Shown in pieces: positions 807 through 24,403 of a stretch of 64,000 nt of DNA; positions within the stretch are counted from its first letter, which is position 1; every line of letters starts with the position of its first letter. The stretch is taken from positions 124,001-188,000 of IMG/VR virus record IMGVR_UViG_3300020195_000009, one strand, 5' to 3'. The notes beneath the pieces were generated by a model. The model searched no databases and had not been told where the DNA came from. It saw only the letters and a program-made list of their open reading frames with translations. The position numbers and the translations under genes were made by a program.

Positions 807-1706
807 TCATTTCATTTTCATTTCACGCTGAATAGCGTGGCGGAAAGCATCCTCTGCGGCGGTCTTCTTCTTGGGGATCTCCCACTTACGAACATGACCA
901 ATGACAGCCGATACGTGTTTGCAAACCCGATTGATCCTCTCGGGGTCTTTAATGTTCGGAGTTGAAGCCGTACCCACGGGCTTACCGTCTATGTACGCCT
1001 CACCCTTCGCATGGAACTCGGAACCCAACCATCTCCAAGCATGGCAGGAGCATGAGAAGTGGGCGTCCATCTTGGTCAAGGCTTTCACTACCCCTTTGCG
1101 GGTTGCCTTAAGCTTGACCATCTTGGGGCCGTTACCGCAGTTGACAGAGAAGATCCAACGAAGATTGCCAACATCCACTCGTTTGACGGAAACAGCGCAA
1201 GTTTTGGATCGGTCGACGACCTTGGGGTTCAACCCCTCTTCAATCTCGGGAAACCGGGCAGCAATCCGCACCAAACCCTCAAGTGGTACCAAGACCTCAT
1301 GGGCCGTCCGTAGCAACCAGAGCTGCGTCACAGACTCAACGAGGTGGGCGTTGTGACGGTTGGGGATCTTGTCCCGGTACGGGTAACGGGTCTTGGAATA
1401 GTCGTTGTCGGGTCGTTCACCAAGCCCGTTGTAGCTAGGTTGGGCTTTCGAGTGGTCGATCTCGTCCGCCCGCCCTTGGTCCTTCAACAGATCGTCGGCG
1501 TTGTCGACATGGTAGATCGACTGGTTGTTCATGGAAGGCTCTCGGGGAGGCTCGCCGGGTGGCTTTGCAAACGTAGAGGACCCAGGGATAGCGGGGTCCA
1601 AAGACAAGCCCTTCCCCGCCGGGTCACCACTGGGGAGCTTGGACTCCGAAAGTGCCGACCCACCCGCTGTGCCGTAAGGCGGGCGAATAACAAGCGGCTG
1701 GATCAT
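807..1706 (-). CDS. SWIM-type zinc-finger protein (putative virion morphogenesis)
   Basis: FSCSCHAW...VCKHV (CxC...CxH) in the C-terminal half; carries the VRIAARF motif. Confidence 0.6.
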   Translation of the reverse strand: MIQPLVIRPPYGTAGGSALSESKLPSGDPAGKGLSLDPAIPGSSTFAKPPGEPPREPSMNNQSIYHVDNADDLLKDQGRADEIDHSKAQPSYNGLGERPDNDYSKTRYPYRDKIPNRHNAHLVESVTQLWLLRTAHEVLVPLEGLVRIAARFPEIEEGLNPKVVDRSKTCAVSVKRVDVGNLRWIFSVNCGNGPKMVKLKATRKGVVKALTKMDAHFSCSCHAWRWLGSEFHAKGEAYIDGKPVGTASTPNIKDPERINRVCKHVSAVIGHVRKWEIPKKKTAAEDAFRHAIQREMKMK

Positions 1707-2458
1707 GGGGAGGCTGCCTTCCCCCGCGCTCTCTTCTCGGCCTTGTATATCCGATTCTGTTCTCGCCGTCTTGCTTTACGTGCCCGCTCCTCAGGGGGGA
1801 GATGAGCGTCTCTGGCGATTGCATTCGCAGCAACCGTTTCCCAAGCCTTGCGCAACCCCTCGGCGTTAGCCTTCTGCCACTCAGGATCAGCATGCTGCTT
1901 ACGAAGCTGCTCTAGGTTCTGCTTTCGCCACTCAGGATTGGCGAGCTTTGCTTGAGCACCCCTTGAACAAGCGTCCCTGTACTCAAGGTCAGCCGCTCTC
2001 TTCTTGGCCCCCTCCGCCACATTCTTCCGCCACTCAGGGTTAGCGGTTCGCTTGCGAACACCTTCCCGAAGCTTCTCTTGGCAAACAGGATCAGCCGCCC
2101 TTTTCAATGCGGCTTCTGCCACATTCCTCTGCCACTTGGGATTTGCCGACCGTTTGCGAGCCCCTTCTCTACTACGTTCCAGAATCTCAGGGATAGAAAA
2201 GTCCACACCTTCTCCGCCAGAGGTAAGGTTGTAGCCCTTAGGAGTGAGGCAGTCGTGGGTTGCTATCTGTCGGATTTCTGCCGCAAGGAGGTCTGCGCGA
2301 ACACCTTCAACGACCTCAAGGCAAACTACCGTAAAGTTTGGGACACCATACTTACGCATCGCCCTATGTAGGGGGTAAGAGCTGCCATTTTTGGCGGCGC
2401 TCAAATGCTCCCCCCAACGCTTTGCGATGAGCTTGGTGAGCCCAACGTACCTAGCCAT
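1703..2458 (-). CDS. GIY-YIG homing-endonuclease-like protein, N-terminally truncated, with six 17-aa C-terminal repeats
   Basis: YVGLT, KRWGEH, AEI and GYNLTSGGEG motifs are present; the first GIY motif is absent; repeats are of the type xRKRxA[ND]PEWxxxxxEG. Confidence 0.7.
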   Translation of the reverse strand: MARYVGLTKLIAKRWGEHLSAAKNGSSYPLHRAMRKYGVPNFTVVCLEVVEGVRADLLAAEIRQIATHDCLTPKGYNLTSGGEGVDFSIPEILERSREGARKRSANPKWQRNVAEAALKRAADPVCQEKLREGVRKRTANPEWRKNVAEGAKKRAADLEYRDACSRGAQAKLANPEWRKQNLEQLRKQHADPEWQKANAEGLRKAWETVAANAIARDAHLPPEERARKARRREQNRIYKAEKRARGKAASP

Positions 2459-2467
2459 CCGAGTGCC

Positions 2468-3214
2468 CTACTTGTGCTTGTCTTTGATGACCGATTTGTT
2501 CTTCTCCCAGTTGTCCGCGATCTCCTCCAATTGAGCGTCCGTGAGGGCCGGGTTGGACTTTTTGAAGCCATCCATCACGTCCTCACGTGAATCCGCTTGC
2601 ATCGGTCCCATCGCCTCGACAGCTTCCTGAGCTGTCTGGGATAGGGCCATCTTGACGTAATGGAGGCCAGCGATGACCACGTGCCGGTTGGGAGTGGCCG
2701 TCTTCTCGATGTAGTTCGCAAGTTGGCGGAGATGCGAGGCGATGCGATTGGTCGATGCGAGTTTGAACATGGCCTGCTTCCCTTGACCCATTTGAGGAGT
2801 CGTTTGAATCGGTTGGATGTACGGCGAACGACGATCGATATGCCGGATTCGGACGTCTTTGAGAACCCGCTCCAGCTCTTCAACCTTCTCTGGCTTGAGA
2901 GACTGCTTCAACTCCTCGTAGTCAAGACGAGAGGCCGCTAGAGCCGTAGCGTCCAGCGCCTTGTCAAGCCTGAAAAGAGCATCGGGGAGGCCATAGATGA
3001 CATCCCCGGCAACTTCGTAGAAGTGGTCTCGATGGCTGGATTGCGAGATGAGCCGCACAGCCTTGTCAACGAAGTCTTTGAGTTGAGCACAACGCATGCG
3101 AGCGTCGGTCAGCTCCTCCATTAAATAAACCGTTACCCCAGCCTCTTTTGAGAGGGCAGCCGTCACTAAATCGGGGAGGGAGATACCCTCTTCGAGCTTC
3201 TCGTCTGACGCCAT
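2468..3214 (-). CDS. Hypothetical helical protein (putative internal head protein)
   Basis: 248-aa ORF with late-type motif 16 nt upstream; several KxA motifs (KEAG, KQAM, KLAS, KTAT). Confidence 0.6.
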   Translation of the reverse strand: MASDEKLEEGISLPDLVTAALSKEAGVTVYLMEELTDARMRCAQLKDFVDKAVRLISQSSHRDHFYEVAGDVIYGLPDALFRLDKALDATALAASRLDYEELKQSLKPEKVEELERVLKDVRIRHIDRRSPYIQPIQTTPQMGQGKQAMFKLASTNRIASHLRQLANYIEKTATPNRHVVIAGLHYVKMALSQTAQEAVEAMGPMQADSREDVMDGFKKSNPALTDAQLEEIADNWEKNKSVIKDKHK

Positions 3215-3249
3215 CGCAAGACGAGAAGCTACAAGAGAAGTAGCGGCAC

Positions 3250-4551: not shown

Positions 4552-4616
4552 TTGGAGGCTCCTCTATAGGGGTGCTTACCCCCTACTCATAGGGATCCCA
4601 TAAAAGGATTCATGCC

Positions 4617-5081
4617 CTAGCCAGCCCGGGGGCCACAAAACTCACACGAGGCTTTAGGAACTCGATGCCACCTTACGTGTGTGTGGTAGCGACCTAGCTT
4701 TGACGCCTCTAGGTTCACCTGAGAAGAATCGACGGATCGAGACCAAGGTAGAGGCCCCCCGAAGTCCCATAGCTGCACTTCCTCTATGGCTAGAAACCCA
4801 AGGGAGAGGCGACATTCGTTGATAAAGATGAGCAGCTCTGAAGAAATCCAAAAGAACTCTCTGGTGAGAGTAATGCGGTCCTTCTTAAACTGGAAGTGGA
4901 CCTCTTTTTCAGGGGTGTTGGTCCAAGCGAGGAGGGCGATTCTTCGGAACGTATTTGTTCGGAGGTTGTAGAGCCGAGTGGTGATTCGAGCACTAACTCC
5001 GATCTTTACCACATTTGGCTCAACGAGGGCGATGTAGGTGCCCTTAGTTGCCGGGGCCGGAAGGTCTACGAGGTGAACCAT
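4617..5081 (-). CDS. T5orf172/MUG113-like GIY-YIG nuclease-domain protein
   Basis: TYIA...VKIGVS...RL..L...EKEVH..F...REFF pattern; C-terminal H/H/CxxC; lower GC than its neighbours. Confidence 0.65.
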   Translation of the reverse strand: MVHLVDLPAPATKGTYIALVEPNVVKIGVSARITTRLYNLRTNTFRRIALLAWTNTPEKEVHFQFKKDRITLTREFFWISSELLIFINECRLSLGFLAIEEVQLWDFGGPLPWSRSVDSSQVNLEASKLGRYHTHVRWHRVPKASCEFCGPRAG

Positions 5082-5092
5082 GGCTCTACAAA

Positions 5093-5131: not shown

Positions 5132-5147
5132 ATCGCCTCGTCGTCGG

Positions 5148-5575: not shown

Positions 5576-6049
5576 TCAAACAGAAGATGTTTGCCCGTTC
5601 ATCGATTCAGCCGCTTCAAGCATTTCCTGAAGGGCCGAATCACCTGACCCGGTTTCAACAGTACCTTGGGCCGGGTCTTCCGTAGACCAAAGCCCAGTGA
5701 GGGCTCCTGAGCCGCTGAGCATCAAAAGAGCCTGCTCTGCAAAGACAGTCTCCGTCTCCCTCAGCCTGTGGAAACCTTGGATGTGCTCCTGGACGGCCTT
5801 GTACGAGTCCTTGATGGCTTCCTCGTCCGTAGGTCCTGTCCCCTCCCAAGATTGATCGAAGGAGACTTGAATCCCCCCAACATCGTCGATCCCCTTGGTC
5901 CCTTGGAGTGAGGCCCTAAATTTCCAACCCCCAAGCCCAATGTCTGAAGGCGAGTGTTGAAACTCGAAGAGTACCTTGGTGACCGATTGAGGATCGATCG
6001 ACTTTCCGAGGAAGAGTAGGGCGTCAGCAAGGACCGAGAGGTGGCTCAT
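5576..6049 (-). CDS. Hypothetical protein
   Basis: 157-aa ORF preceded by GGTGTA motif and SD-like GAGAGG. Confidence 0.6.
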   Translation of the reverse strand: MSHLSVLADALLFLGKSIDPQSVTKVLFEFQHSPSDIGLGGWKFRASLQGTKGIDDVGGIQVSFDQSWEGTGPTDEEAIKDSYKAVQEHIQGFHRLRETETVFAEQALLMLSGSGALTGLWSTEDPAQGTVETGSGDSALQEMLEAAESMNGQTSSV

Positions 6050-6072
6050 GCCGCCTCTCTACACCAGAAGCC

Positions 6073-6681
6073 TCAGACTAGGGCTTGGTTTCCGATCTGC
6101 ACCTTGTGGAAAGTCCCGTTGAAGTCGCTTCCGGTAGCGACCCCACCGACCCCAACGAACACGTAACTAGGCTGAAAAGGAGCCCATGTGGCCGTTGGGT
6201 TGGTCCCCCACGTGGTCGTAGCCGTTTCACTCTGCCGAAACTTGGCGAACCTTGCCCCATCGATGGCTTGCTCAGAGTTCCAGGAGTAGCGAAGCCTCAT
6301 CTGGGCTCCCGCTACCTCTGCGGCGAATTGGCCGGCAGCGACCAAGACCCCCGCAGCGGATCGTTGATGGACGATAGCTTGGTTGTCTGTAGTGAGATAA
6401 ATTTCAAGAAACCGCGTTGGAGAAACGGCGGCATCCGCAAGGACCACAAGAGACCTGGAGGAGCCCGTAGCCCCAGTCGTGATCCACAGGTCAATGGCCC
6501 CTTTGATCCCTGAGATTTGCGTTACCGCGTAACGACCAACCCCAAGACCCGTGAAGACAAGTCCGGGGAGAAGCTCGGTTACCCTCGGTGCCCTCTGAGA
6601 GGCACCAACCATGGGGAGCCCAGGGTTCATCGAGAGGTCCCCGATCATGCCGGTTGGGTAGAGAATGAAGGGCTCGGTCAT
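6073..6681 (-). CDS. Putative virion protein, LamG/concanavalin-like beta-sandwich
   Basis: Beta-rich pattern GAIDLW...LEIYL...YSWN...FVG...FNGTFHKVQI; immediately downstream of the capsid gene; late motif 18 nt upstream. Confidence 0.5.
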   Translation of the reverse strand: MTEPFILYPTGMIGDLSMNPGLPMVGASQRAPRVTELLPGLVFTGLGVGRYAVTQISGIKGAIDLWITTGATGSSRSLVVLADAAVSPTRFLEIYLTTDNQAIVHQRSAAGVLVAAGQFAAEVAGAQMRLRYSWNSEQAIDGARFAKFRQSETATTTWGTNPTATWAPFQPSYVFVGVGGVATGSDFNGTFHKVQIGNQALV

Positions 6682-6699
6682 CGTACCCGAAGGCGGGAT

Positions 6700-6708
6700 A
6701 CAAGAAGA
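6700..6708 (-). promoter_or_regulatory. Putative late promoter motif TCnTCTTRT (representative copy)
   Basis: Similar copies at 3231, 13641, 16419, 21410, 28283, 29203 and 54848; most lie 16-21 nt before a start codon. Confidence 0.55.
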
Positions 6709-6732
6709 TCAGGCGGGAGGGGACGGTACCAC

Positions 6733-6772
6733 AAAGCCGAAAGGCCACCCCGGTTTCCCAGGATGGCCTTTC
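6733..6772 (-). terminator. Intrinsic terminator after major capsid gene
   Basis: GAAAGGCCATCCTGG-GAAA-CCGGGGTGGCCTTTC hairpin followed by GGCTTT. Confidence 0.65.
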
Positions 6773-6800
6773 AACAGTGGCTTATTCAGCCTGCTTCGTG

Positions 6801-7673
6801 TCAGACGCGGGTGACGATCAACCGTGTGAGACCACGTGGGTTGAACGCCCCTATACCCACGTTCTCGAAACATGAGAAGCCGATTGTCCGGGCCTTCGGA
6901 TCGTCCGCGGAAAGCACGGTGAGTTCCGTGCGGACCGGGAAGCGGCCGAAGTTCTCCGGCTCGGCGCAGATGTACACGAACCCGGCTGGAACCAGCCGCG
7001 ACGTGATGATCTGAGCACCCCAGAGAGTGGCCTGGAGGCCAGTCTTGAGGAGGACTGCCTGGCTCTCGATGTCCAGGATGTCCCGACCGAACTTGCGGAT
7101 GTCCGCGTAGTCCGTCGCATTCATGTAGATACGAGCGACCCGGAGGTCGTGACGTTCCACTTCTGCGAAGGCGTCCGCGAGGACCGAGGGGCTGATCGGA
7201 GCCACGACGTTGATGTCGGGGTTCGTCTGGCCGGGGAGGGTGTCGAAGCCCGAGACAGCGATGCTGTCGAGGACGGCGAACACACGCTCATCTTCGGCTG
7301 CCTGGATCTGCGCCTTGGCGAGGTCCTGGCTGCGTTCGATGAGGTCGAAGCGGCGCTCCTTGATCTGCGTGAGCGGGATCTCCGGGTTCGAGGCGATCTC
7401 GAACAGCGGGAAGATCACGCGACGAGGCTTCTGGATGGCGAGAATGTTCTCGCCCTCTTCGCCGACGACGTAGGCCGTGACGTCCGGGTCCTTGTCGTAG
7501 ATCGGAAGGGCTCCGTCCGGGAGCTGCTCCACCAAGAAGGTCTTACGACCCACTGCCGTGTAGTCACGGCGAAGGCGAAGCGGTTGGATCATGGAAGCAG
7601 CGAGCTTCGCTCGGCCAGCGGCCGTTTTGATGTACTCGCTGATGATCTGCTGCTTGATGTCGTTGGATACCAT
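6801..7673 (-). CDS. Major capsid protein (HK97 fold)
   Basis: 290 aa with very strong codon bias, downstream of protease-scaffold-decoration genes. The segment LAASMIQPLRLRRDY...PIYD...FEIASNPEI...AAEDERVF resembles, from recall only, capsids of Bxz1/cluster-C-like large phages. Confidence 0.85.
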   Translation of the reverse strand: MVSNDIKQQIISEYIKTAAGRAKLAASMIQPLRLRRDYTAVGRKTFLVEQLPDGALPIYDKDPDVTAYVVGEEGENILAIQKPRRVIFPLFEIASNPEIPLTQIKERRFDLIERSQDLAKAQIQAAEDERVFAVLDSIAVSGFDTLPGQTNPDINVVAPISPSVLADAFAEVERHDLRVARIYMNATDYADIRKFGRDILDIESQAVLLKTGLQATLWGAQIITSRLVPAGFVYICAEPENFGRFPVRTELTVLSADDPKARTIGFSCFENVGIGAFNPRGLTRLIVTRV

Positions 7674-8502: not shown

Positions 8503-9951
8503 TCAGCGGTCGGGAAGGCCGAAGGCCTCCTTGACGTTGGGTGCCGAACCCCAGAGCGACGAGAGCTTGCCGATCTCGTTGCCGCCACTGGGAGCTGGGC
8601 CGCCACCAATGTGGCTCACACCCTGAGTGGGGCGTGTTCCGACGGTACGGCTGGAAGCTGTACGAACGGCATGAGCCTGCTTCTGTTGCTGCTCACCACC
8701 GTCCTGAGCCTGCTGGGCCTGTTGAGCCTCATCGTTGGAGAAGAGCTGACGAAGGACATCATCCTCCGGTCCGAGTTGAACCTCACCGACGTCCATCGAG
8801 GGGGTTTCGAGTTCGATCTCCATCTCCGCTTTCGGAGCTTGGATGCCACCATCCGAAGCGAGCATCTGATCGATGAGAGCATCATCGCCCATCATCGGCA
8901 TTTGCTGCTGCTGACCCTGCTGAGCAGGCATCTGCTGCTGGTTGCCCTGCTGCTGCATCTGTTGAACGATCTGCTGAGCCGCTTGAACAGGATCCTGACC
9001 CTGTTGAATGGCGGACTGGATGGCCTGCTGCATCTGCTGAGCCTGTTGCTGCTGCTGGGCAAGCTGCTGCTGCTGGGCAAGCTGCTGCTGGTTCGCTTGA
9101 ACCGGCATCTGCCCCTGCTGCTGAGCGAGCTGTTGCTGTAGCTGGGCAACCTGCTGCTGTAGCTGGGCAACCTGCGGGTTCTGCTGAGCCTGCTCCTGCT
9201 GCTGAGCCATCTGTTGCTGCATGGCCTGCTGGACCATCTGCTGAGCAGACTGAGCGTCGCCCTGTTGGAGGGCGAGGACGGCCTGAAGAGCCTGGTTGGC
9301 TTGCTTCTTCTTGTCGTCGTCCTTCTTGGCGGCGGCTTCTTCCTTCTTCTTTTCCGCGTTCTCTTTGAACTGCGGAGGCATCTGACCGGCCTGCTTCTGG
9401 TCCTGCTGACCTTGGGCTTCCTTGTCGTCCTCGCCTTCCTTCTTGTCCTGGGCCTGCTTCTGCTGGTCCTGACCCTGGGCTTCCTTGTCCTTGTCGTCGC
9501 CTTCCTTGTCCTTGTCCTGACCGGCAAGGCGGGTGTACGTCGACATGACCTCCGCATCGGGGAGGTGCATGAAGGAAATCGACTGCTCCTCAACGTCCAG
9601 CTCGGACGCCGTCTTGGGGAGCATCGCCCGAGCGATGGCGACACAGAGGGCCGCCTTCTTGGTGAGGACTTCCTCACTCGCTGTCTTCTCGGGATGATTG
9701 AAGGTGTCGCCCCTCATCTCCGGCATGCCGATCTCGTTCCGCTTCACTTGGCCGCCGCTGTACTCGGCCTCCCAGGTGGAGCCGGAGGGGTGGATGTCCT
9801 CGGCAAACGAGGAGGGGTCACCAGACACGTACTTGTCAGCCGGGGGCTGAACCTTCACGTGATCCTGATTCATCAGGTAGGGGTCCGCCGTTTTGATTGT
9901 CGCCCGCTTGGCGATCTCATCACGGTTCCAGGTTGAACGCTCTCGGGGCAT
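8503..9951 (-). CDS. Capsid scaffolding protein with poly-Q and K/D/E-rich tracts
   Basis: Lies between protease and decoration/capsid genes; low complexity; many K-[TQE]-A motifs. Confidence 0.6.
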   Translation of the reverse strand: MPRERSTWNRDEIAKRATIKTADPYLMNQDHVKVQPPADKYVSGDPSSFAEDIHPSGSTWEAEYSGGQVKRNEIGMPEMRGDTFNHPEKTASEEVLTKKAALCVAIARAMLPKTASELDVEEQSISFMHLPDAEVMSTYTRLAGQDKDKEGDDKDKEAQGQDQQKQAQDKKEGEDDKEAQGQQDQKQAGQMPPQFKENAEKKKEEAAAKKDDDKKKQANQALQAVLALQQGDAQSAQQMVQQAMQQQMAQQQEQAQQNPQVAQLQQQVAQLQQQLAQQQGQMPVQANQQQLAQQQQLAQQQQQAQQMQQAIQSAIQQGQDPVQAAQQIVQQMQQQGNQQQMPAQQGQQQQMPMMGDDALIDQMLASDGGIQAPKAEMEIELETPSMDVGEVQLGPEDDVLRQLFSNDEAQQAQQAQDGGEQQQKQAHAVRTASSRTVGTRPTQGVSHIGGGPAPSGGNEIGKLSSLWGSAPNVKEAFGLPDR

Positions 9952-11664: not shown

Positions 11665-12428
11665 TACCTAGCTCCTCGTTGCGAAACCACGGGAGGAGCA
11701 AGAGCGGGTGAGGTCTTGAACCAATCGTGGGGCTCTCCCGTCGGACCCAGGATGGAAGGAGGGTCGATCAAGTAGAGGCACTTGGGGCAAGCGAAAACCG
11801 AGTGCTTGGCTCCTTTGTTCATCTTGTAGGTCGCCTTGCGCATCCGAGAGCCACACTTTGGGCAAGTCGGCTTACCGATCTTGAGATCCTCACCCGTGGC
11901 TCGGTACTGCCGGTTCTGGGCGACCCAGTAAGCGCCTGCCTTTTGAATCGCCTGTTGAATCCGAAGCTCCCCTGCGTTGCGGGCGAGACGGTAGAACTTC
12001 CTTACCTCATCTCGGAGGGCTTCATCATCAACGTTGGGTGAGAGGGTTCGGTAAAGGTCATCGTAGGCGATGACCTCCCCGGCTCCCTTATGCCATTGAC
12101 GGGCGAGGTCGATGTAGACCGAAGGCTGAAACTGAGCGTTCCGCCAGAGGGGAGCGGATGCCTTCCGCGCCTTTTCGATCTCGACCGTCGAGTAACTTTG
12201 ATCGAAGGCAGGGGGTAGGTACCGAAGGAAATCCGGGCTGACCCTGACAACGTCATCAGGGAAGACTCGCTCGTTGCCGAACGGCCACTGAACATCCAAG
12301 CAACCGATGCCCCGGTGGACGGCGGTTACGGACCCAACGTAGGGTGAGAGCTGTCCCGTGTTGACGTCGATCTTTTGGACCGCATCCCCTTGGGAGTACT
12401 CTTTTGTCAGCTTCCAGTAATCAATCAC
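11664..12428 (-). CDS. Hypothetical head-module protein with SH3-like N-terminus and C-terminal Zn ribbon
   Basis: CPKCG...CPKC; its stop overlaps the start of the protease gene. Confidence 0.6.
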   Translation of the reverse strand: MIDYWKLTKEYSQGDAVQKIDVNTGQLSPYVGSVTAVHRGIGCLDVQWPFGNERVFPDDVVRVSPDFLRYLPPAFDQSYSTVEIEKARKASAPLWRNAQFQPSVYIDLARQWHKGAGEVIAYDDLYRTLSPNVDDEALRDEVRKFYRLARNAGELRIQQAIQKAGAYWVAQNRQYRATGEDLKIGKPTCPKCGSRMRKATYKMNKGAKHSVFACPKCLYLIDPPSILGPTGEPHDWFKTSPALAPPVVSQRGAR

Positions 12429-12473
12429 GAGCGCCCCACGAAGGGTTAGGGTTGCTTTTGAAGAACCCGAACC

Positions 12474-16400: not shown

Positions 16401-16436
16401 GCCCACCCCGGCTGGGCGAAAAGACGAGTATCGGTC

Positions 16437-18245
16437 CTAGAACCGGCCTTCTTCTGCGGCGGCTGGTTCTTCTTTGACGCTAAGGTTGAGGTACTTGGCG
16501 ATCTTGTCCATGATGTCGGTCTTTTCCGCGAGCATCCGGCCGACCTCCCCATAGATCCCGCGAATGACCTCGTTGAACACGGAGTCGTTGACCGAGAACA
16601 TGTCTCGCTCGATCTTCTCTTTCGTATCCGCTGGGTCGATGTTGAACATCTCCAGAATGAGGTCGATGGAGATGCTCCCCTTCTGGTACAAATTGAAGAG
16701 GGCGTCGTAGGTGTCCTGGCTGTCCCGAAGGGCCAGACGAGTGAAGGAGAGCCTTGGGATGAGGACAACCTCATCCCCCCAATCATCCTTCTCCACGAAC
16801 CCCTTGCGTCTTGCTACGGGCTTGAAGAGGTACTCCTCCACATACTCCTGGAGCATCTCTCTGAAGAGCAGATAGCGGGTGTTGAGGACCTCCAGCTTGA
16901 CTCGGTCTCCGGAGAACGTGCTCTCTCCGTTGAGAAGACTCTCGGTCACACCAAGGCCTGCGAAGAGCTGCTTATCCGTGATCTCGTATTCACCAGACAG
17001 ATCAAGGAGACGGTCACGGGCTCCGATCTCTTCCCAGTGGACCTCGTAGTTGGTGACGATCGAGTAGTCCGGGTCCACGAGAGCCAAGTCGACCTGCTCA
17101 CGAAGATCATCCGTATCAATGTCCGAAAGGTTCTCACCCCACACGAGACGCTTGGGCGTCATCGCTCGGTCGGCGATGAGCGTCTGGGCCTGCCGGAGCT
17201 TCTCTCGGTAGTACAGGATACGAAGACAACGATCGAGGAGGCTGGCCCCAAGCTCCTCACCAGCTCCACGTCGGGCCGTGAGATGGTAACAGAACGAACC
17301 CTCATCAGGATCCGTCCCAAGTGGGATCAACTGGCCAGATTCGATGTAGTCCCGCACTTCTTGGGGGATTTCTTCGACCATCCGCTGGGCCTTATCGTCC
17401 CCGATTTTGGCCTGCTCGATGAGGGCTCGGTCCCGGTCTGACGGGATTAGGTCGAGTTGAACCTTGTCCGTGAAGCTAAAAGAAGCGAGCTTGACCTGGT
17501 CGATAGGGAGGATGATGAGCTTGTCCCACCCCTTGTAATGCTGCTGATAGTACGCCAGCTCAAGGTCTTCTCGATCGTTAAGTTCCGTGATCGACTCTTC
17601 GACTTCCTCCACCCCGTTGCCGTCGTCATCGAGGGAAGACTTGACGTTCTTTTCGATCTTGTGCCCAACCTCGGGCGGTACGTCTACGGTCCCATCCTCA
17701 GCAAACAAGAACACGTTTCCATCGAGATGGTAGTGGTGAGCCCCCGTGATCAGCCGTTGAAACAGCTTGATCCGCTTGCACATCTTCTCAAAAAACGAGA
17801 GAATGTAACGGCCGTAATCTTCGGGGCTCTTGAACCTATCCGGGTGTGTCCGAGGGGTCGGTTTCGCTAGGCGAACCTTGGAGAGCGGAAGCTCTGTATG
17901 TAGGTCGATGGCCTGCCCTACAATAGGGTCTGTGTTGTAGAAGTGGCGATAAATCTCTCGCTTCTCACGAAGCGATTGGGGCAGTTGGAGGAAGTCTGTC
18001 GAGAGTTGGGGCGAGAAAAACGCCCCCTGACCCGACAATGTTGTGTGTCCACCACCGGCCCCACCCGTTGGAAACGCCCCGGCCGTCTTGTTCTGGCTCT
18101 GGCTGGCTCGACGAGCCATACGCTCCTTTTCGGTCAAATTGGTGATCCCACCCTTTGCCGAATAGGGGGCATGCAAGTAACGACCGATCTGCGTGTTCGC
18201 TAGAACGATGCCGTTTCGAGCATTGGTGAACCGATCAGCGGGCAC
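16437..18245 (-). CDS. Portal protein
   Basis: 602 aa in the head module; YRHFY..DPIVGQAIDLH, GNVF, G.SLL.R...L, LFAGLGV.ESLL.G segments typical of large-phage portals. Confidence 0.8.
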   Translation of the reverse strand: MPADRFTNARNGIVLANTQIGRYLHAPYSAKGGITNLTEKERMARRASQSQNKTAGAFPTGGAGGGHTTLSGQGAFFSPQLSTDFLQLPQSLREKREIYRHFYNTDPIVGQAIDLHTELPLSKVRLAKPTPRTHPDRFKSPEDYGRYILSFFEKMCKRIKLFQRLITGAHHYHLDGNVFLFAEDGTVDVPPEVGHKIEKNVKSSLDDDGNGVEEVEESITELNDREDLELAYYQQHYKGWDKLIILPIDQVKLASFSFTDKVQLDLIPSDRDRALIEQAKIGDDKAQRMVEEIPQEVRDYIESGQLIPLGTDPDEGSFCYHLTARRGAGEELGASLLDRCLRILYYREKLRQAQTLIADRAMTPKRLVWGENLSDIDTDDLREQVDLALVDPDYSIVTNYEVHWEEIGARDRLLDLSGEYEITDKQLFAGLGVTESLLNGESTFSGDRVKLEVLNTRYLLFREMLQEYVEEYLFKPVARRKGFVEKDDWGDEVVLIPRLSFTRLALRDSQDTYDALFNLYQKGSISIDLILEMFNIDPADTKEKIERDMFSVNDSVFNEVIRGIYGEVGRMLAEKTDIMDKIAKYLNLSVKEEPAAAEEGRF

Positions 18246-18249
18246 TTAT

Positions 18250-18753: not shown

Positions 18754-18758
18754 TTGAT

Positions 18759-19271
18759 TTACATAGAAGTCTGAATTCCCAAGAAGTTTCGATTACTTGT
18801 CTTGGGAATTTGAGCCACGAACCCGGTGAAAAAGGCGGGGGCTAGAGGGTGCCCGGATAGGGTCATCTCGTCCTCCTTCGTCCACAAACCACGAAGTGAT
18901 AGATAGAGTATGTCCTGGACTTGGTAGACGAGCGGGACGAGGGGTCCCCCAAGACGGGAGGCATACGTGTACTGCTCGTAGCTGCTCGTAGAGATGAGGC
19001 AGCCTCCCGAGAACATCGTGGCGTAGCGATAGTGGGGTTGCTGGCGGGTGATCGCCGTGAAGCGGTCCCCCTCTTCATCCGAGCCCCAAACAAGGAAACC
19101 CCCGTAGAGACCCTCTGAGTAGGTGACCAACCGTTCATCGCCCGTTGACCCTGCCCATTGAACACCTTGACCCCCAGGCCAACCACCCGTGACCATAGCT
19201 TGAGACACCGCCACGGTCTGAGTGTCGCCTTTGAAAAAAACGACGCAGTCTCGGGAGCGTAGGATCTCCAT
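18759..19271 (-). CDS. Decoration-like protein, tandem paralogue 3
   Basis: RSRDC...KGD...GGWPGGQGVQW...YSEGLYGGFLVWGSDE shared with the two upstream ORFs. Confidence 0.7.
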   Translation of the reverse strand: MEILRSRDCVVFFKGDTQTVAVSQAMVTGGWPGGQGVQWAGSTGDERLVTYSEGLYGGFLVWGSDEEGDRFTAITRQQPHYRYATMFSGGCLISTSSYEQYTYASRLGGPLVPLVYQVQDILYLSLRGLWTKEDEMTLSGHPLAPAFFTGFVAQIPKTSNRNFLGIQTSM

Positions 19272-19273
19272 GG

Positions 19274-19801
19274 TCAGATTGAGGTCTGGAGGGTGATGAA
19301 AAAGTTGTTGTCAGCCGACGGAGCCTGCACCACGCTCGCTACAAAGAAGTTGTTGGGGGCTCTAGGGTCGGCCGTGATCGTCCATTCGTCTTCGCGAGTG
19401 AAAAAACCTCGAAGGGAAAACACGACCCGTTCCCCAACGACGTAGTTGTTTTCGACGAGCGGCCCACCAAGCCTGGAGGCGTAAGTGTAACGCTCGAACG
19501 TTCTCGTAGAGATGAGCCAACCGCCAGCGCAAAGGGTTCCGAATCCGTAGAGGGGTTGATTGCCCGTGAGGGAGGCGAATTTGTCGGAGTCTTCATCAGA
19601 CCCCCAGAGAAGAAAGCCCCCATAGAGCCCATCGGAATACGTGACGATGAACTCATCCAAGGAGGAGTCGATCCACTTGACTCCTTGCCCACCTTGCCAA
19701 CCCCCAGTCTTCATCGCCTGGGATACAGCAACGGGGTACGCATCACCCTTGAAAAGGACGTAGCAGTCTCGCTCACGGGGGAAGCTTTTGATGAAGGCCA
19801 T
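19274..19801 (-). CDS. Decoration-like protein, tandem paralogue 2
   Basis: RERDC...KGDAYPV...GGWQGGQGV...YSDGLYGGFLLWGSDE. Confidence 0.7.
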   Translation of the reverse strand: MAFIKSFPRERDCYVLFKGDAYPVAVSQAMKTGGWQGGQGVKWIDSSLDEFIVTYSDGLYGGFLLWGSDEDSDKFASLTGNQPLYGFGTLCAGGWLISTRTFERYTYASRLGGPLVENNYVVGERVVFSLRGFFTREDEWTITADPRAPNNFFVASVVQAPSADNNFFITLQTSI

Positions 19802-20316
19802 CAGATGCTCACCTGAATTCCCATAAAGAATTCAGTCGAGGCGCTGGGGATCTGTGACACGAATCCGATGAAGTAGCTGTTGGAGCCTCTTGGGTCGCCT
19901 GAGAGCGTCCACTCATCTTCGCGGGTCCAGTAACCCCTTAAACTGAAAACGAGTCGATCACTTGGGGAGTAGACGATCTGAACTAGCGGGCCAGCTTGTC
20001 TGGAGGCGTAGGTGTACTTCTCGTAACTTCGAGTAGAGATATGCCAACCCCCGGCTCCACATGTGGCAAACCTGTAGAACGGTTGGCTTCGGGTTGTAGC
20101 AGTGAACTGATCCGCAGATTCATCCGAACCCCAAAGCATAAATCCTGCGTAGAAGCCGTCCGAGTAGGTGACGAGAAACTCGTCTTTCAGCGGGGGGGCC
20201 CATTGAACCCCTTGGCCCCCTTGCCACCCACCGACAGACATCGCCTCAGAGATCGTGACCGGATAGGCGTCTCCTTTCACGAGAATTATGCAATCTCGGC
20301 TCCTGGGGAGTTCCAT
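19801..20316 (-). CDS. Decoration-like protein, tandem paralogue 1
   Basis: RSRDC...KGDAYPV...GGWQGGQGVQW...YSDGFYAGFMLWGSDE. Confidence 0.7.
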   Translation of the reverse strand: MELPRSRDCIILVKGDAYPVTISEAMSVGGWQGGQGVQWAPPLKDEFLVTYSDGFYAGFMLWGSDESADQFTATTRSQPFYRFATCGAGGWHISTRSYEKYTYASRQAGPLVQIVYSPSDRLVFSLRGYWTREDEWTLSGDPRGSNSYFIGFVSQIPSASTEFFMGIQVSI

Positions 20317-20317
20317 C

Positions 20318-21388
20318 TCAAGCCGACTCCGTCTCCTGTTTGCGGCCCGGCATCTTGCTCCAAACCGTCACGACGGTCTTGAGTAGTTCGTTGTGAATGG
20401 GATCCCCATTGAGGAACTTCTCCCAACTACCCCCACTCTGACGGAAGACCGACCTCATCACTTTGAAGTCGGTCTCTTCTGTAACGGTATCTTCCGACAC
20501 CATGTGATCCACAAGTTGACGGATGACGCGATCCCCAAAATTCAAAGGAACCTCAGGCGGGCAATCGAAGGAAGCTGCCTTCTCGTTCAACTTCTCGATG
20601 ACCGAGCCGTCATGAAGGTAAGCTTCCTCCATGGAAGGCACGAGGTACTGACTACGAAGCGTAGACGCCTCGTGCCCTACCGCTTCGGCAGCCCCTTCGA
20701 TGGCCTTCTTGAACTCGGCCTTGAGGATCTTGTCCTTCTCTTTGCGACCGGCTGGAAGCTTCGGACCCCCTGACCGAATCTTCCTCAGGCGCTCTTGGAC
20801 CTCCGTGTTCGCGTGAAGACCCCGGATGTCCTTGGCCGTGATGTCGAAGTCGGTCAGGTAGGCGTTGACTTCTTTCGCTCCCACGCACCCATCATCGTGG
20901 GAGAAGATGCAGGTCTCGCCCCCCTCCACAGAGTCGTAGGCCTTGCGGAGCGCCTTGAGGATCTGGCCGTCCGAGACCTTTTTCTCGTGCTTGACTCCAG
21001 ACTTGCCAACGTACTTGACCGTTGCTGTCCCCTTGCCGAACGACAAGTGACGCTTCTGCCAGCCTGTCACCCCAAAGTGGCCCTCATCGGCGGACCCGTC
21101 GTTTCCGACTCGCTCGTAGGTGTGGTCAATCAAGGCAACCGCAAGAGCCGTCAGCTTGGTGGACAGGTCCTTGGAACCCATGTCGGATTTGACTTTAGTT
21201 CGGAGCTTCCCCATCGATTGACGAAGCTTCTCGACACGATTGGCCTTCTCGTTGTTGCGGTTCGCGATCTGACGATCGCTATACTCGTAGACCGTCATGT
21301 CCTCACCGGACTCGGTCTTGATCTTCTTCTTGGACTTGTACCTAGCCACAACGCGAAGGGCTATCGGGTCTAGCTGGGGAATCCTCAT
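20318..21388 (-). CDS. DNA topoisomerase IB (poxvirus/bacterial-type catalytic core)
   Basis: Full catalytic pentad: ERVGN (R), GKSG (K), AKDIR (R), VGH (H), RSQYL (Y). Confidence 0.88.
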   Translation of the reverse strand: MRIPQLDPIALRVVARYKSKKKIKTESGEDMTVYEYSDRQIANRNNEKANRVEKLRQSMGKLRTKVKSDMGSKDLSTKLTALAVALIDHTYERVGNDGSADEGHFGVTGWQKRHLSFGKGTATVKYVGKSGVKHEKKVSDGQILKALRKAYDSVEGGETCIFSHDDGCVGAKEVNAYLTDFDITAKDIRGLHANTEVQERLRKIRSGGPKLPAGRKEKDKILKAEFKKAIEGAAEAVGHEASTLRSQYLVPSMEEAYLHDGSVIEKLNEKAASFDCPPEVPLNFGDRVIRQLVDHMVSEDTVTEETDFKVMRSVFRQSGGSWEKFLNGDPIHNELLKTVVTVWSKMPGRKQETESA

Positions 21389-23394
21389 CGTGTTCTCCCC
21401 AAGGGCTTTACAAGACGATCCCGGTGGACCCCGTGTTGACGCATCCGAGCCATCTGGAAGTGCTGCAAGGACCTCGGCCCACCACTCTGCCGTGGGTCAT
21501 TAGGGTTCCTCGGGGCCGTGATCTTCATGGTGCTGATCCGCTCCATTGAGAGCCAAATGGCTCGAATGAGAGCGTCGGATACATCGTCATGAGCCCCGCT
21601 GATCTGCGGCGCCTCCACGACAATCTGGTTACGTGCCGTCTGCTTGGCTTGGAGGCTCAGCATCTCTTCAATGAGAGGAGAATGCTTGGATTGCGACTCA
21701 CCCACCTTGGGCAGCGGGTAGTCGTAGAGGATCACTCGCTTGTCGAAGATGAGAAGCTTCGCCGCCTGGAACATCCGGCTTGTCGCATCACGGTTGTAGA
21801 ACTCACTCTTGAACTGCTTTAGGCCCTTCTTGTGGAGGGCCTCCTCCAAAGGGAGCCCATTCCAACGATCGAACGATCCGGCTGTGATATAGAAACGTTT
21901 CGTGAGGAGAACGATCCACTTGGCGATCTCCTCGAAGTCCAAACGCTCCGCCATCTCCAGCGTCTTTGCGTAATCACATAGAGGGTTCGTGAGGTGCGGG
22001 TTGGACTCCTTCCACGGGACCCCGGCGTACCAAGCCTCGTGGTAATCAAGGATGATCTTCGGACCCTCGGTATGCGTAATCGCAATCGCGGTCCCGTCTC
22101 CTATGAGCCCAACGTCGATCCCCATTTGGTGAGGGAACCTAGGCGGGCCGTACGTTTTGGGCCGTAGGTCTGGGCGAACGCATTCGATGAGGTCGGTCTC
22201 TCGTTCAATCCAACCTCGAACACGATCGGAGAACAGAGCCCCATGCTCCGTCATGAAGACCGTCGGGTCCTCATGGTACTTCTCACGGTAGTAGCTCGTT
22301 GGGATGGTCGGGTTGACCTCCCACGTCGGAGCCTGAATGACGAGCATGTTCTCCGAGCCGGGACCCCGACTCATTCCAAGGTGGAACAGCTCGTAGAACT
22401 TACCAGCCTTGTTCAAGGGAGACGAAATGCAAATGACGCGGGCTTCGGACTGAGTCTCCGATCCGTGAATAGGGAGTCCCGTGTCGAGGTCCTTAGCGGA
22501 GAAGGCAGCCACGGACGGAGTGATAGCGTCGTAAATGTCCTTAGCGCTGGACTTACCTTTATCCTGAAAGTGGGCGATCTCGTCCAGGATGATGACGATG
22601 TTACCAGAGCCTCGAAGGCCCTTTGAAATGCTCGCCTTGAAGGTAACCCGGATACTCGCCTTACCGTTGAACGAGGTGAACTTTCCGTCCGTATGTCGGA
22701 CTGTAGGACCGTAACGCTCGATATCATAAGGGGTTCGGAGCTGAACGTAGGAGAGTGTGTTGTTGGCGATGTACGGTTGGAAGAACTCGCACTTCGCCAT
22801 GTGCGAAGTCACGTCATTAAAGAGAAGGCCTGCTTGGTCCTTATCGGTAGCGACCGAGATGATTTGAATGCGGTTGCCGTTTGGGAGCCCGTAGTACTCC
22901 TGGGGGTTACCAAGAGAGAGCAGGCGGTACAGCTCGTAGCTAGCGAAAACAGCGGACAATGTCGTCTTGCCAGCCCTCCTACCGATGGGAAGCGTGAGCT
23001 GACGACGAAGATGGTCTTGTTCCCCGATGTTGCAACGACCCTCGTTGTAGAGGTAGCTCAGGTACTCCTTCTCCGTGAAAGTGTAGAGCGTTTTTGTGTT
23101 GAACATGTCCGAGATCCGAATCCTTCGGGTCTCGTCTTCTGGAAGCTTATCGTCAAGAGGCAGGTGGTAGTACAGCTTCACGATGAAGCGTTGTACCGGG
23201 AACAACCTCATATTGAGGCCCCAGGCAGACTCAACGTAGTTTAGAACGTTGAAGATACGGGTGGTCCGGCCGCTAGATCCAACAGAGGCTAGATCCCCAT
23301 TACCCGACTGTTCATCAGAGATGACCCGAGCACGATGCCCGGCACTCCGAATCAGATGGGAAATGCTTGACGATGACTTTTGCTCCCGAGCCAC
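21385..23394 (-). CDS. terL: Terminase large subunit
   Basis: Walker A GRRAGKT, Walker B IIILDE, coupling motif ISSP, RNase H-like nuclease GIDVG...DGTA and HDDVSDA. Confidence 0.92.
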   Translation of the reverse strand: MAREQKSSSSISHLIRSAGHRARVISDEQSGNGDLASVGSSGRTTRIFNVLNYVESAWGLNMRLFPVQRFIVKLYYHLPLDDKLPEDETRRIRISDMFNTKTLYTFTEKEYLSYLYNEGRCNIGEQDHLRRQLTLPIGRRAGKTTLSAVFASYELYRLLSLGNPQEYYGLPNGNRIQIISVATDKDQAGLLFNDVTSHMAKCEFFQPYIANNTLSYVQLRTPYDIERYGPTVRHTDGKFTSFNGKASIRVTFKASISKGLRGSGNIVIILDEIAHFQDKGKSSAKDIYDAITPSVAAFSAKDLDTGLPIHGSETQSEARVICISSPLNKAGKFYELFHLGMSRGPGSENMLVIQAPTWEVNPTIPTSYYREKYHEDPTVFMTEHGALFSDRVRGWIERETDLIECVRPDLRPKTYGPPRFPHQMGIDVGLIGDGTAIAITHTEGPKIILDYHEAWYAGVPWKESNPHLTNPLCDYAKTLEMAERLDFEEIAKWIVLLTKRFYITAGSFDRWNGLPLEEALHKKGLKQFKSEFYNRDATSRMFQAAKLLIFDKRVILYDYPLPKVGESQSKHSPLIEEMLSLQAKQTARNQIVVEAPQISGAHDDVSDALIRAIWLSMERISTMKITAPRNPNDPRQSGGPRSLQHFQMARMRQHGVHRDRLVKPLGRTR

Positions 23395-23397
23395 GGA

Positions 23398-24006
23398 TCA
23401 CCTCAGAGCGTTCGTGGCTCGGTCCTCCCAGCCTTCCATCACCGAAGCAAATCGGTTGAAGAAGAGGTTCATCACTTCCTGAGGGAGAGTCTCTTGCGCA
23501 ACTTCACGCATGGTCTCCACCCAAAGGGTGAACAGCTTTTGCATCCGCTCGCTGCTCAAGTTGACGGAGGCCGAATCCAGCTCTTTGATCTTCAACTCGA
23601 TGTCAGCGATCTTCTTGAGGGCTTCGATGCGTCTGGTCGAGACCTGACCCGTTTCCTTTCCGCGCTTCGCAACTTCGAGGCGCTCGAAGTTGAGGCTAGC
23701 CGCTTCGGACGCGACCTCCTTCTTGATGAGGTAGAGGATTTCTAGGGGTGCCCCCTTAGCTTCGATCTTCTGTACAAGAGGGTCGGAGGCGATGAACTTC
23801 TGGCGCTCCCGGACCATCTCAGCATGGTATTCGAGGTCACTCGTTGTTGGCTTTCGCTCGATCTTACGGGGGCGACCTACCCCTCGCTTGACGCTGGCAA
23901 GTTGGTGACCCTCCGAAGTGTTCGGAGCATCCTGTTCCGGGAGGAGACGCAGGACTGCGTCGACACGCTCTTCTTCGGAGTTGGGGTTTGTTCCGTCCTT
24001 CTTCAT
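23398..24006 (-). CDS. Putative terminase small subunit
   Basis: Helical 202-aa ORF immediately upstream of terL; AT-hook-like KRGVGRPRK. Confidence 0.5.
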   Translation of the reverse strand: MKKDGTNPNSEEERVDAVLRLLPEQDAPNTSEGHQLASVKRGVGRPRKIERKPTTSDLEYHAEMVRERQKFIASDPLVQKIEAKGAPLEILYLIKKEVASEAASLNFERLEVAKRGKETGQVSTRRIEALKKIADIELKIKELDSASVNLSSERMQKLFTLWVETMREVAQETLPQEVMNLFFNRFASVMEGWEDRATNALR

Positions 24007-24013
24007 TGTATCC

Positions 24014-24403
24014 TCACTTCACAGGCTTGGTGCCGCCGCCCCCACCTGTCTCGATGAGATATTGGGAGAGGTTCTTCACTGTAGCATAGCCTTTGTCTTT
24101 GGGAATTTGCTTCTCAATGACTTTGGCAAGGTCTTTACCCGTCTCAGCCAAATTGCGAACACTCGTTTGATTCGGCTTGGGGACGAACACATCCTCAGGT
24201 CGGATGTCACGACGATTGGGTGAGACGGTTTCGTCGTGACCATCACCCATGGGCTTGCCGTGCTCTTTGAGGATCGAACGATCAATACCCTTGGGGCGGT
24301 TCACGGGCTTGACCATGTCCTTGTCCTTCTTCCGTTGACCAGGGGGTTGGTCACTTTGAAGGAATCTGGCAGCCACCCGGAGGATGAGAACATCGTCGAT
24401 CAT
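24014..24403 (-). CDS. Small basic protein with N-terminal LRVAARFL motif (putative internal head protein)
   Basis: 129 aa; motif shared with the topoisomerase and the 1310-aa protein. Confidence 0.6.
   Translation of the reverse strand: MIDDVLILRVAARFLQSDQPPGQRKKDKDMVKPVNRPKGIDRSILKEHGKPMGDGHDETVSPNRRDIRPEDVFVPKPNQTSVRNLAETGKDLAKVIEKQIPKDKGYATVKNLSQYLIETGGGGGTKPVK

What the first reader, a model, noticed from the sequence alone, without database searches (positions are those of the whole stretch)
1250..24385. Shared RV[AV]xR[FY] peptide in unrelated head-module proteins: candidate capsid-targeting signal
Seen: LRVAARFL (24014..24403, aa 8-15), LRVVARYK (TopIB, aa 11-18), ARVVDRFL and DRVVSRYL (1310-aa protein N-terminal region), VRIAARFP (807..1706, just before the SWIM domain), with looser copies in 24400..26412 and 2468..3214. 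I did not notice it in replication proteins. Known: T4 internal proteins use a short N-terminal capsid-targeting sequence. Inference: a portable helix that docks cargo on the scaffold or inner capsid.
Basis: partly seen in the sequence, partly recalled or inferred. Interest (0 to 1): 0.66.

Follow-up and report, generated by a model that had tools for sequence, protein, structure and literature searches.

The report
Shared N-terminal address peptide, huge phage
About ten otherwise unrelated proteins per genome in a large group of uncultivated huge phages start with the same short helix (R-V-A-x-R-F/Y), a real and portable "address label" that most likely loads them into the capsid, although that destination is inferred and not shown.

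Summary
RV[AV]xR[FY] occurs 4 times in 3 window proteins: the 129-aa protein, TopIB and the 1310-aa protein. It occurs 9 times in 7 proteins of the 286-kb record, against 0.25 expected. Two related huge-phage genomes give 8 and 9 hits against 0.3-0.4 expected. Hits sit almost always at residues 4-25 of the ORF, use different synonymous codons, and are conserved in orthologues whose flanks diverge. Carriers are mostly unrelated to one another: TopIB, J-domain proteins, an HD/CCA-type nucleotidyltransferase, small basic proteins and unknowns. The leader is gained, lost and duplicated. A 485-kb relative instead puts a different ~30-aa leader on at least 9 proteins, and one cargo domain wears either leader. 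Three window carriers lie inside the head module (TerL, portal, protease, scaffold candidate, MCP). Capsid targeting of the T4-CTS kind is the best reading (about 0.5), but nothing here shows it directly. No receptor was identified, no cleavage site was found, and the complex prediction gave no verdict. The internal RIAARF copy (807..1706) and the two "looser copies" are chance. Carriers are also not confined to the head module.

The parts
24353..24394 (-). Leader helix of the 129-aa small basic protein (aa 4-17; core RVAARF = 24362..24379)
   Evidence: Conserved in 11 of 12 orthologues and in most of 21 representative clusters.
24014..24403 (-). 129-aa carrier: leader plus a Lys/Arg/Pro-rich, pI 9.7 protein. 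Its start overlaps the stop of the upstream 683-aa gene, and it lies just upstream of the 202-aa gene and TerL.
   Evidence: No Pfam or PHROG family.
21338..21355 (-). Leader core RVVARY of TopIB (aa 12-17), followed by a Lys-rich linker
   Evidence: 59 of 120 homologues carry a strict and 86 of 120 a relaxed N-terminal leader. Modelled as helix 8-16 with pLDDT<50 while the core is confident.
20318..21388 (-). Type IB topoisomerase carrier (356 aa); its start overlaps the TerL stop
   Evidence: PF01028 E 6e-22. Fold Z 23.2 to variola TopIB and 22.1 to a bacterial TopIB, whose alignments begin at model residues 43-47.
16122..16178 (-). Two tandem leader cores (RVVDRF aa 77-82, RVVSRY aa 90-95) in the 1310-aa protein
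   Evidence: The same position (aa 73-80) is conserved in orthologues and degenerate in the most distant ones.
12474..16406 (-). 1310-aa carrier directly downstream of the portal. It is highly charged with Pro/Glu/Lys-rich repeats in its first ~500 aa and has no known family.
16437..18245 (-). Portal protein (context)
   Evidence: phrog_16240 E 1.9e-26.
21385..23394 (-). Terminase large subunit (context)
   Evidence: phrog_2 E 2e-20; tblastn.
9997..11664 (-). Prohead protease with a long helical C-terminal extension (context; candidate receptor or processor)
   Evidence: phrog_18299 E 4e-12. No Peptidase_S77 or S78 match.
8503..9951 (-). 482-aa acidic Gln/Ala/Glu-rich low-complexity protein between protease and MCP: scaffold candidate and favoured receptor (inference)
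6801..7673 (-). Major capsid protein, HK97 type, 290 aa (context)
   Evidence: phrog_2522 E 1.6e-51. Database homologues carry PF05065.
1251..1268 (-). RIAARF inside the 299-aa protein: chance match, not part of the system

Best explanation
The motif is the core of a ~14-residue N-terminal amphipathic helix with consensus hydrophobic-hydrophobic-x-R-V-A-x-R-F/Y-L-x-A-K. It has a hydrophobic stripe flanked by two near-invariant arginines and is joined to its cargo by a poorly conserved, often basic linker. It behaves as a portable address label. It sits on roughly 7-17 unrelated proteins per genome across a large clade of uncultivated huge phages, and it is gained, lost, duplicated in tandem and swapped. 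SHOWN: it is non-random, selected at the peptide level, biased to the N-terminus, conserved across relatives, modular, and predicted helical but not packed on the cargo. INFERRED: the helix docks on a phage-encoded receptor in the assembling prohead. That receptor is most likely a fast-evolving core component, such as the Gln-rich scaffold candidate or the protease's C-terminal extension, rather than the nearly invariant shell protein. Docking would enclose the carriers in the capsid for delivery into the next host with the DNA, as with the T4 capsid-targeting sequence and the P1 DarB signal. Whether the leader is later cut off by the prohead protease is unknown.
For: Statistics and replication. 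Peptide-level selection through diverse codons. Conservation in orthologues of the 129-aa, TopIB and 1310-aa families. Leader at residues 4-12 in three further relatives. Carriers unrelated to each other, with carrier sets differing between genomes. Gain and loss on orthologues: the J-domain protein has the leader here and in G004 but not in G002. TopIB fusions with an added N-terminal domain regain a copy at the new N-terminus. A parallel system exists: at least 9 N-terminal carriers in LR745208.1 share only a ~30-aa different leader. One cargo domain carries that leader there, an NVVARW variant in G004, and a J-domain in G002. Head-module position: the 129-aa gene lies just upstream of TerL, the TopIB start overlaps the TerL stop, and the 1310-aa gene lies between portal and protease. 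That last position is where T4 encodes its prohead core proteins gp67 and gp68 (textbook T4 gene order, from memory). Cargo is heterogeneous, as with T4 internal proteins and Alt: TopIB, J-domains, an HD + PolyA_pol nucleotidyltransferase, and small basic proteins. The models show a helix of low confidence next to a confident core. The definitions of the T4 and P1 signals fit: PMC9026906 and PMC9024508.
Against: There is no direct evidence that any carrier is in a virion. No receptor was identified. The one complex prediction (leader with scaffold candidate and MCP) gave no verdict. No conserved protease-type site follows the leader. The protease matches neither Peptidase_S77 nor S78. Many carriers are encoded far from structural genes. 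No shared promoter motif links them to head genes. In TopIB the segment is kept directly upstream of the catalytic core even when it is internal, so there it may also have an enzyme-intrinsic role such as DNA contact. In the 1310-aa protein and some 129-aa relatives the motif is not at the extreme N-terminus.
Confidence: 0.5

Rival explanations
1. The helix is a docking motif for a different common hub, not the capsid. Candidates are a host or phage chaperone (DnaK or GroEL), a replication or transcription factory, or self-association into a condensate. It would co-localise carriers in the infected cell.
For: Several carriers are J-domain co-chaperones, which typically use a separate element to localise Hsp70. 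Cargo includes enzymes that act in the cytoplasm, namely TopIB and the nucleotidyltransferase. Many carriers are encoded outside structural modules. The T4 gp23 N-terminus is reported to direct proteins to GroEL (cited in PMC10052503).
Against: Three carriers, including the best-conserved ones, lie inside the head gene cluster, with the 129-aa and TopIB gene starts overlapping the stop of the gene upstream. The leader type changes between related phages while host chaperones would stay the same. That argues for a phage-encoded, co-evolving receptor.
Confidence: 0.25
2. It is an N-terminal degron or processing tag recognised by a phage or host protease, used to time the abundance of accessory proteins.
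For: It is short, N-terminal and portable, and sits on accessory proteins whose repertoire turns over.
Against: Tandem duplication and retention behind added domains fit avidity for a binding site better than a degron. The head-module context also argues against it. No known N-degron or ClpX N-motif resemblance was noted (from memory, not tested).
Confidence: 0.1
3. It is an import signal for a phage-built compartment of the chimallivirus 'phage nucleus' type.
For: These are huge phages. TopIB would be useful beside the DNA.
Against: phiKZ gp54 (chimallin) finds nothing at E<=1 in this record or in four relatives, two of them complete. That is a sequence search without a positive control, so the evidence is weak. 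A sigma-70 region-2-like gene suggests use of host RNA polymerase. No linear import signal is known for chimalliviruses (from memory).
Confidence: 0.05
4. The similarity is convergent or inherited structural sequence with no common function: a basic DNA-binding helix in TopIB and unrelated helices elsewhere.
For: In TopIB the segment stays attached to the core even in fusions. The MCP itself has a similar internal LRVARIY segment.
Against: The same six-residue core appears at the same N-terminal position on more than 30 unrelated ORFs in five genomes, with out-of-sample P values of 1e-6 or lower. Extended TopIB fusions re-acquire it at their new N-terminus.
Confidence: 0.05

Closest known systems
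T4 capsid-targeting sequence (CTS) of internal proteins IPI-III, Alt and others
   Same: It is a short N-terminal peptide shared by otherwise unrelated, fast-turnover accessory proteins. The carriers include small basic proteins and enzymes. The phage has a separate scaffold and a prohead protease, and one carrier is encoded between portal and protease (PMC9026906).
   Different: There is no sequence resemblance (from memory, not tested). Here the consensus is Arg-rich. It is often in tandem and sometimes lies behind another domain. No protease site is evident. The protease is not detectably gp21-like. Packaging is unproven.
P1 DarB N-terminal capsid-targeting signal
   Same: The N-terminal ~30 residues suffice to direct a large enzyme into the head (PMC9024508).
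   Different: The P1 authors found no consensus among the Dar protein N-termini. Here one consensus is shared by many proteins.
Encapsulin cargo-loading peptides; HK97 protease C-terminal capsid-targeting tail
   Same: A short peptide on a flexible linker loads diverse cargo into an HK97-fold shell. The MCP here is HK97-type.
   Different: Those peptides are usually C-terminal and bind the shell protein itself (from memory). Here the shell protein is 84% identical in a phage that uses a completely different leader, which argues against the shell as receptor.
Bacterial microcompartment encapsulation peptides
   Same: An N-terminal amphipathic helix plus a poorly conserved linker on unrelated enzymes.
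   Different: That is a different kind of shell (from memory). The context here is a phage head module.
Propeptides of giant-phage head proteins (phiKZ, SPN3US)
   Same: Huge capsids carry many packaged proteins, some with short 20-24-residue N-terminal propeptides (PMC10052503).
   Different: Those are defined by A-x-E cleavage sites and not by a shared leader sequence. No such site is conserved here.

Membership tests
T4-type capsid-targeting sequence system | Short (10-19 aa) N-terminal peptide shared by otherwise unrelated proteins | tested here: met
T4-type capsid-targeting sequence system | Peptide removed by the prohead protease at a consensus site just after it | tested here: inconclusive
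   No conserved residue or Glu position follows the leader in 38 aligned instances. The specificity of this protease is unknown.
T4-type capsid-targeting sequence system | gp21-family (Peptidase_S77) prohead protease and a separate scaffolding core | tested here: not met
   A protease is present (phrog_18299), but there is no S77 match at E<=1. The scaffold candidate is identified only by composition and position.
T4-type capsid-targeting sequence system | Carriers found inside proheads or virions, and the peptide sufficient to load a foreign protein | not testable with these tools
   The clade is uncultivated and has no proteome. The complex prediction gave no verdict.
Encapsulin-type cargo-loading peptide | Peptide binds the inner face of the HK97-fold shell protein | tested here: inconclusive
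   No verdict. Co-variation argues against it, since the MCP is 84% identical where the leader is entirely different.
Chimallivirus nuclear import | Presence of a chimallin shell protein | tested here: not met
   No hit in this record or in G001-G004. This was sequence-level only.
Sec/Tat signal peptide | Hydrophobic h-region after a basic n-region (twin-Arg for Tat) | tested here: not met
   The aligned leaders are followed by charged or polar linkers with no long hydrophobic run, and the two Arg are four residues apart.
Type IB topoisomerase (the carrier at 20318..21388) | TopIB catalytic core by sequence and fold | tested here: met
   PF01028 E 6e-22. Z 23.2, rmsd 4.9 over 261 residues to 2h7f.

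The most novel reading that the evidence does not exclude
Uncultivated huge phages with a near-invariant 290-aa HK97 shell protein run a general cargo-loading system. Interchangeable N-terminal address labels (the RVAxRF/Y helix here, a ~30-aa TLRSKLIRLAH...LLPLLKEA leader in a sister lineage) load a changing set of 10-17 effector proteins into the capsid for injection, including a topoisomerase, J-domain co-chaperones and a tRNA-type nucleotidyltransferase. The label co-evolves with a core or scaffold receptor.
Probability: 0.4. Interest if true: 0.8.

Novelty: new variant of a known kind. Interest (0 to 1): 0.68.

Why it matters
If the leader is a capsid address, it identifies by sequence alone the injected-protein repertoire of a very abundant but uncultivated clade of huge phages. 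More than 2000 database proteins are at least 85% identical to this MCP, on contigs up to 620 kb. It would show that capsid-targeting signals, proven so far only in T4 and P1, are a general and evolvable mechanism. It would also give a 14-residue tag that could be tested for loading foreign proteins into large capsids. Even if the destination is not the capsid, a conserved short linear motif on about 10 unrelated phage proteins defines a hub interaction worth finding. A practical point: gene callers sometimes start these genes at a downstream Met and so clip the leader off.

Tried and rejected
1. Complex prediction of the leader (129-aa protein, residues 1-40) with the scaffold candidate and MCP gave no verdict (ipSAE 0.13 and 0.11, mark 0.34; all chains folded without alignments). 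It is not evidence either way.
2. A 9-mer search for a promoter motif shared by carriers and head genes found nothing.
3. A search for a conserved cleavage motif after the leader found none.
4. The function of the always-leadered 385/416-aa cargo family remains unknown. The model is confident (pLDDT 90), but there is no Foldseek match at E<=0.001 and the best VIA Z is 6.7, to generic helical hairpins. An invariant C-x2-C...H...C site is the only clue.
5. The 1310-aa protein has no Pfam, PHROG or phage-database match.
6. PDB sequence searches of the 433-aa and 482-aa proteins and the protease found nothing meaningful.
7. PHROGs on the neighbours of the 184-aa carrier found nothing.
8. A leader-swap test on the 416-aa family in LR745208.1 showed that the orthologue has only a degenerate K-I-A-A-K-P and not the other leader.
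9. The second leader matches no Pfam family.
10. A DNA-level repeat or regulatory element was rejected because the codons differ.
11. A Tat or Sec signal was rejected on sequence.
12. MCP as receptor was down-weighted on co-variation.
13. The reads tools and alternative genetic codes were not used.
Full report
CONTEXT. The window is bases 124001-188000 of a single 286,005-bp viral contig with 57% GC. IMG/VR classes it as linear and about 60% complete. Almost all genes in the window are on the minus strand. The large terminase (21385..23394) is closest to a 485-kb uncultured phage, LR745208.1 (46% identity), and to the 309-kb Tunturiibacter phage Tunturi_5 (27%). Fifteen IMG/VR loci have TerL 57-100% identical, several on contigs of 230-437 kb. 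This is therefore a member of an uncultivated clade of huge phages.

HEAD MODULE. In transcription order on the minus strand, the module is as follows.
- 525-aa and 683-aa proteins of unknown function.
- 129-aa protein (24014..24403).
- 202-aa protein.
- TerL.
- TopIB (20318..21388; PF01028).
- Three paralogous 170-175-aa proteins, then a 167-aa ORF.
- Portal (16437..18245; phrog_16240).
- 1310-aa protein (12474..16406).
- 254-aa protein.
- Prohead protease (9997..11664; phrog_18299).
- An acidic, Gln-rich 482-aa protein (8503..9951), which I take as the scaffold candidate.
- 216-aa protein.
- HK97-type major capsid protein of 290 aa (6801..7673; phrog_2522, E 1.6e-51).

- The rest of the same contig has 5 hits in 4 proteins against 0.20 expected (P 2e-6).
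- Two relatives fetched whole give 9 against 0.32 (G002, 363 kb) and 8 against 0.41 (G004, 380 kb).
- Using the rate in non-coding reading frames as background, which allows for GC-rich composition, the excess in genes has P of 9e-6, 6e-7 and 3e-11.
- Among 240 permutations of the same six pattern elements, the real order scores highest (9, with a mean of 0.53).
- The codons encoding the motif differ freely (five Arg codons, four Val codons), so the constraint is on the peptide and not on a DNA or RNA element.

POSITION. In the three genomes, 6 of 9, 8 of 9 and 5 of 8 strict hits lie within the first 25 residues of the ORF, where only 10-11% of residues lie (P 7e-5, 1e-7, 7e-4). Some of the exceptions become N-terminal if an internal Met with an orthologue-supported start is used. 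With a relaxed pattern ([RNQK][VI][VAI]xR[FYW]) in the first 30 residues there are 7, 14 and 9 carriers against 0.2-0.4 expected. Three further relatives show the same thing, with leaders at residues 4-12.

WHAT FAILED. The internal RIAARF in the 299-aa protein (807..1706) scores within the null and is not conserved in orthologues. The 'looser copies' in 24400..26451 and 2468..3214 score below zero.

ANATOMY. Thirty-eight aligned instances give a consensus with hydrophobic residues at -3, -2, +1, +2, +5, +6 and +8, near-invariant Arg at 0 and +4, and often Asp at -5 and Lys at +9. That spacing is what a four-turn amphipathic helix with an Arg-lined edge would show (inference). AlphaFold2 models of two carriers agree. 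In TopIB (mean pLDDT 83.5) residues 8-16 are helical but have pLDDT below 50. In the 385-aa cargo (mean pLDDT 90.2) residues 5-25 are helical at pLDDT 51-68 next to a core at 94 or above. Solved bacterial TopIB structures align only from model residue 43-47 onward. The leader is thus a helix that the models do not pack onto the cargo. What follows it is variable and often basic, and no conserved cleavage-type position was found.

MODULARITY. Carriers are mostly unrelated to each other outside the leader. Those with recognisable domains are:
- TopIB.
- J-domain proteins: this genome at 5815..7170, plus G002 and G004.
- An HD + poly(A)-polymerase/CCA-type nucleotidyltransferase in G002.
- A family with a weak Zn-peptidase motif.
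The rest are unknown, and several are small and basic.

The carrier set differs between genomes. The J-domain orthologue has a tandem leader here, a degenerate one in G004, and none in G002. Carriers partly cluster in islands, at 4.8-9.5 kb here and 214-224 kb in G002. Of 120 database TopIB homologues, 59 have the strict and 86 the relaxed N-terminal leader. Where another domain has been fused in front, the RVAARY-KxKKK segment stays next to the catalytic core. At least five such proteins carry a further copy at their new extreme N-terminus. This speaks for selection on an exposed N-terminal copy. It also warns that in TopIB the segment may have a second, enzyme-intrinsic role. The 129-aa family (21 clusters at 50% identity in 1.8 billion proteins) mostly keeps the leader, sometimes in tandem and sometimes behind an added domain.

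A PARALLEL LEADER. LR745208.1 lacks the motif near TerL. In it, at least 9 ORFs begin with a different, roughly 30-residue leader (TLRSKLIRLAH...LLPLLKEA), a tenth ORF carries it internally, and all of them are similar to each other only in that leader. One of these ORFs lies between the scaffold-candidate orthologue and the MCP gene. The cargo domain of another (L096) is 45% identical to a G004 protein whose N-terminus is an NVVARW variant of the present leader. It is also 43% identical to the C-terminal part of a J-domain protein in G002. Homologous cargo can therefore wear either label, which is what interchangeable targeting modules would predict.

WHERE DOES IT SEND THE CARGO? This step is inferred. 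Five points favour the capsid.
- Three of the best-conserved carriers lie inside the head-morphogenesis cluster.
- The starts of the 129-aa gene and TopIB overlap the stop of the gene upstream (the 683-aa gene and TerL).
- The 1310-aa protein sits between portal and protease, the position of the prohead-core genes 67 and 68 in T4 (from memory of the T4 map).
- The cargo is heterogeneous and turns over quickly, as described for T4 internal proteins.
- The phage has a separate scaffold candidate and a prohead protease.
The published definitions fit. T4 CTSs are 10-19-residue N-terminal propeptides with affinity for the scaffolding core, and they can load foreign proteins (PMC9026906). In P1, the first 30 residues of DarB do the same (PMC9024508).

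As to the receptor, the MCP is 97-98% identical within the clade and still 84% identical in LR745208.1, which uses the other leader. The scaffold candidate, protease and 216-aa protein there are only 32-41% identical. I therefore favour a fast-evolving core component over the shell protein. This is a weak argument, because a few interior residues could differ.

Against the capsid reading, there is no proteome and no receptor. The complex prediction gave no verdict. No cleavage site was found. The protease matches neither Peptidase_S77 nor S78. Many carriers are encoded far from structural genes, and no shared promoter motif was found.

RIVALS. The main rival is a docking motif for some other hub. 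The J-domain carriers make a chaperone-related hub conceivable, but a host hub would not explain why related phages use different leaders. A phage-nucleus import signal is unlikely, since phiKZ chimallin finds nothing in five records (sequence-level only) and a sigma-70-like gene is present. A degron cannot be excluded. Pure chance or convergence is excluded by the replication.

VERDICT. The motif is a genuine, portable N-terminal leader of a huge-phage clade. The capsid-targeting interpretation is the best-supported mechanism, at about 0.5, but it remains an inference. As a kind of system it is a new variant of the T4 and P1 capsid-targeting signals. It has a new consensus, many carriers per genome, and an interchangeable sister leader.

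Noticed in passing
LR745208.1 (loci L091-L094, L096-L101; L089:33242-33646 and L089:40869-41699): At least 9 unrelated ORFs of this 485-kb phage begin with a shared ~30-aa leader (TLRSKLIRLAH...LLPLLKEA), and a tenth (L094) carries it internally. One lies between the scaffold-candidate orthologue and the MCP gene. No Pfam family covers it.
   Followed up: partly
window 6801..7673: The 290-aa HK97-type MCP is extraordinarily conserved. More than 2000 database proteins match at E<=1e-10, the best 120 at 85-99% identity, on contigs up to 620 kb. It is 84% identical even where TerL is only 46% identical. It also contains an internal leader-like LRVARIY (aa 177-183) that is conserved in LR745208.1.
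   Followed up: partly
window 18759..20316: Three tandem paralogues (170-175 aa, 57-60% identical to each other, 85% to relatives) lie between TopIB and the portal. No family matches, and there is no counterpart near TerL in LR745208.1.
   Followed up: partly
window 20318..20560 (TopIB C-terminal ~80 aa); L007:11992-12237, L011:11750-12004, L015:1003-1254: The C-terminal extension of TopIB lies outside the TopIB fold. It exists as a free-standing 81-84-aa ORF right after TerL in relatives that lack TopIB.
   Followed up: no
window 24400..26451: The 683-aa protein upstream of the 129-aa carrier has three repeats of a Cys-rich unit (C-x-G-C ... C ... P-L-V) and matches no known family.
   Followed up: no
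window 1703..2458: A GIY-YIG homing-endonuclease-like gene (phrog_314, E 2e-19) sits among genes downstream of the head module.
   Followed up: no
window 12474..16406, aa 1-75 and 100-500: The 1310-aa protein has a conserved, highly charged N-terminal ~70 aa ending in L-N-Y-K-x-V-G-G-S just before the leader. It then has Pro/Glu/Lys-rich repeats. Its length varies from 940 to 1356 aa among relatives.
   Followed up: partly
genome 218879..219094 (outside the window; L018:6880-7095): A 71-aa ORF has two tandem leaders followed by the start of an 'FFNVGD' small domain that is complete in database homologues (e.g. P0293, P0281). It looks like a truncated remnant. The FFNVGD domain is another module that combines with the leader.
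   Followed up: partly
P0244 versus G002 11630..12736: The database gene call for a cargo protein starts at a downstream Met and clips off the conserved leader. Leaders may be under-reported in automatic annotations.
   Followed up: partly
L089:18665-19966 and L089:22134-23417: Two ~430-aa ORFs flanking TerL in LR745208.1 resemble each other and, by their N-terminal sequence, look like TnpB-type transposon-associated proteins. This was not verified.
   Followed up: no
L089:26090-27616: TopIB of LR745208.1 is fused behind a HAD-like N-terminal domain (DxDGT motif) and keeps an internal, degenerate NVAAKY at aa 178.
   Followed up: partly
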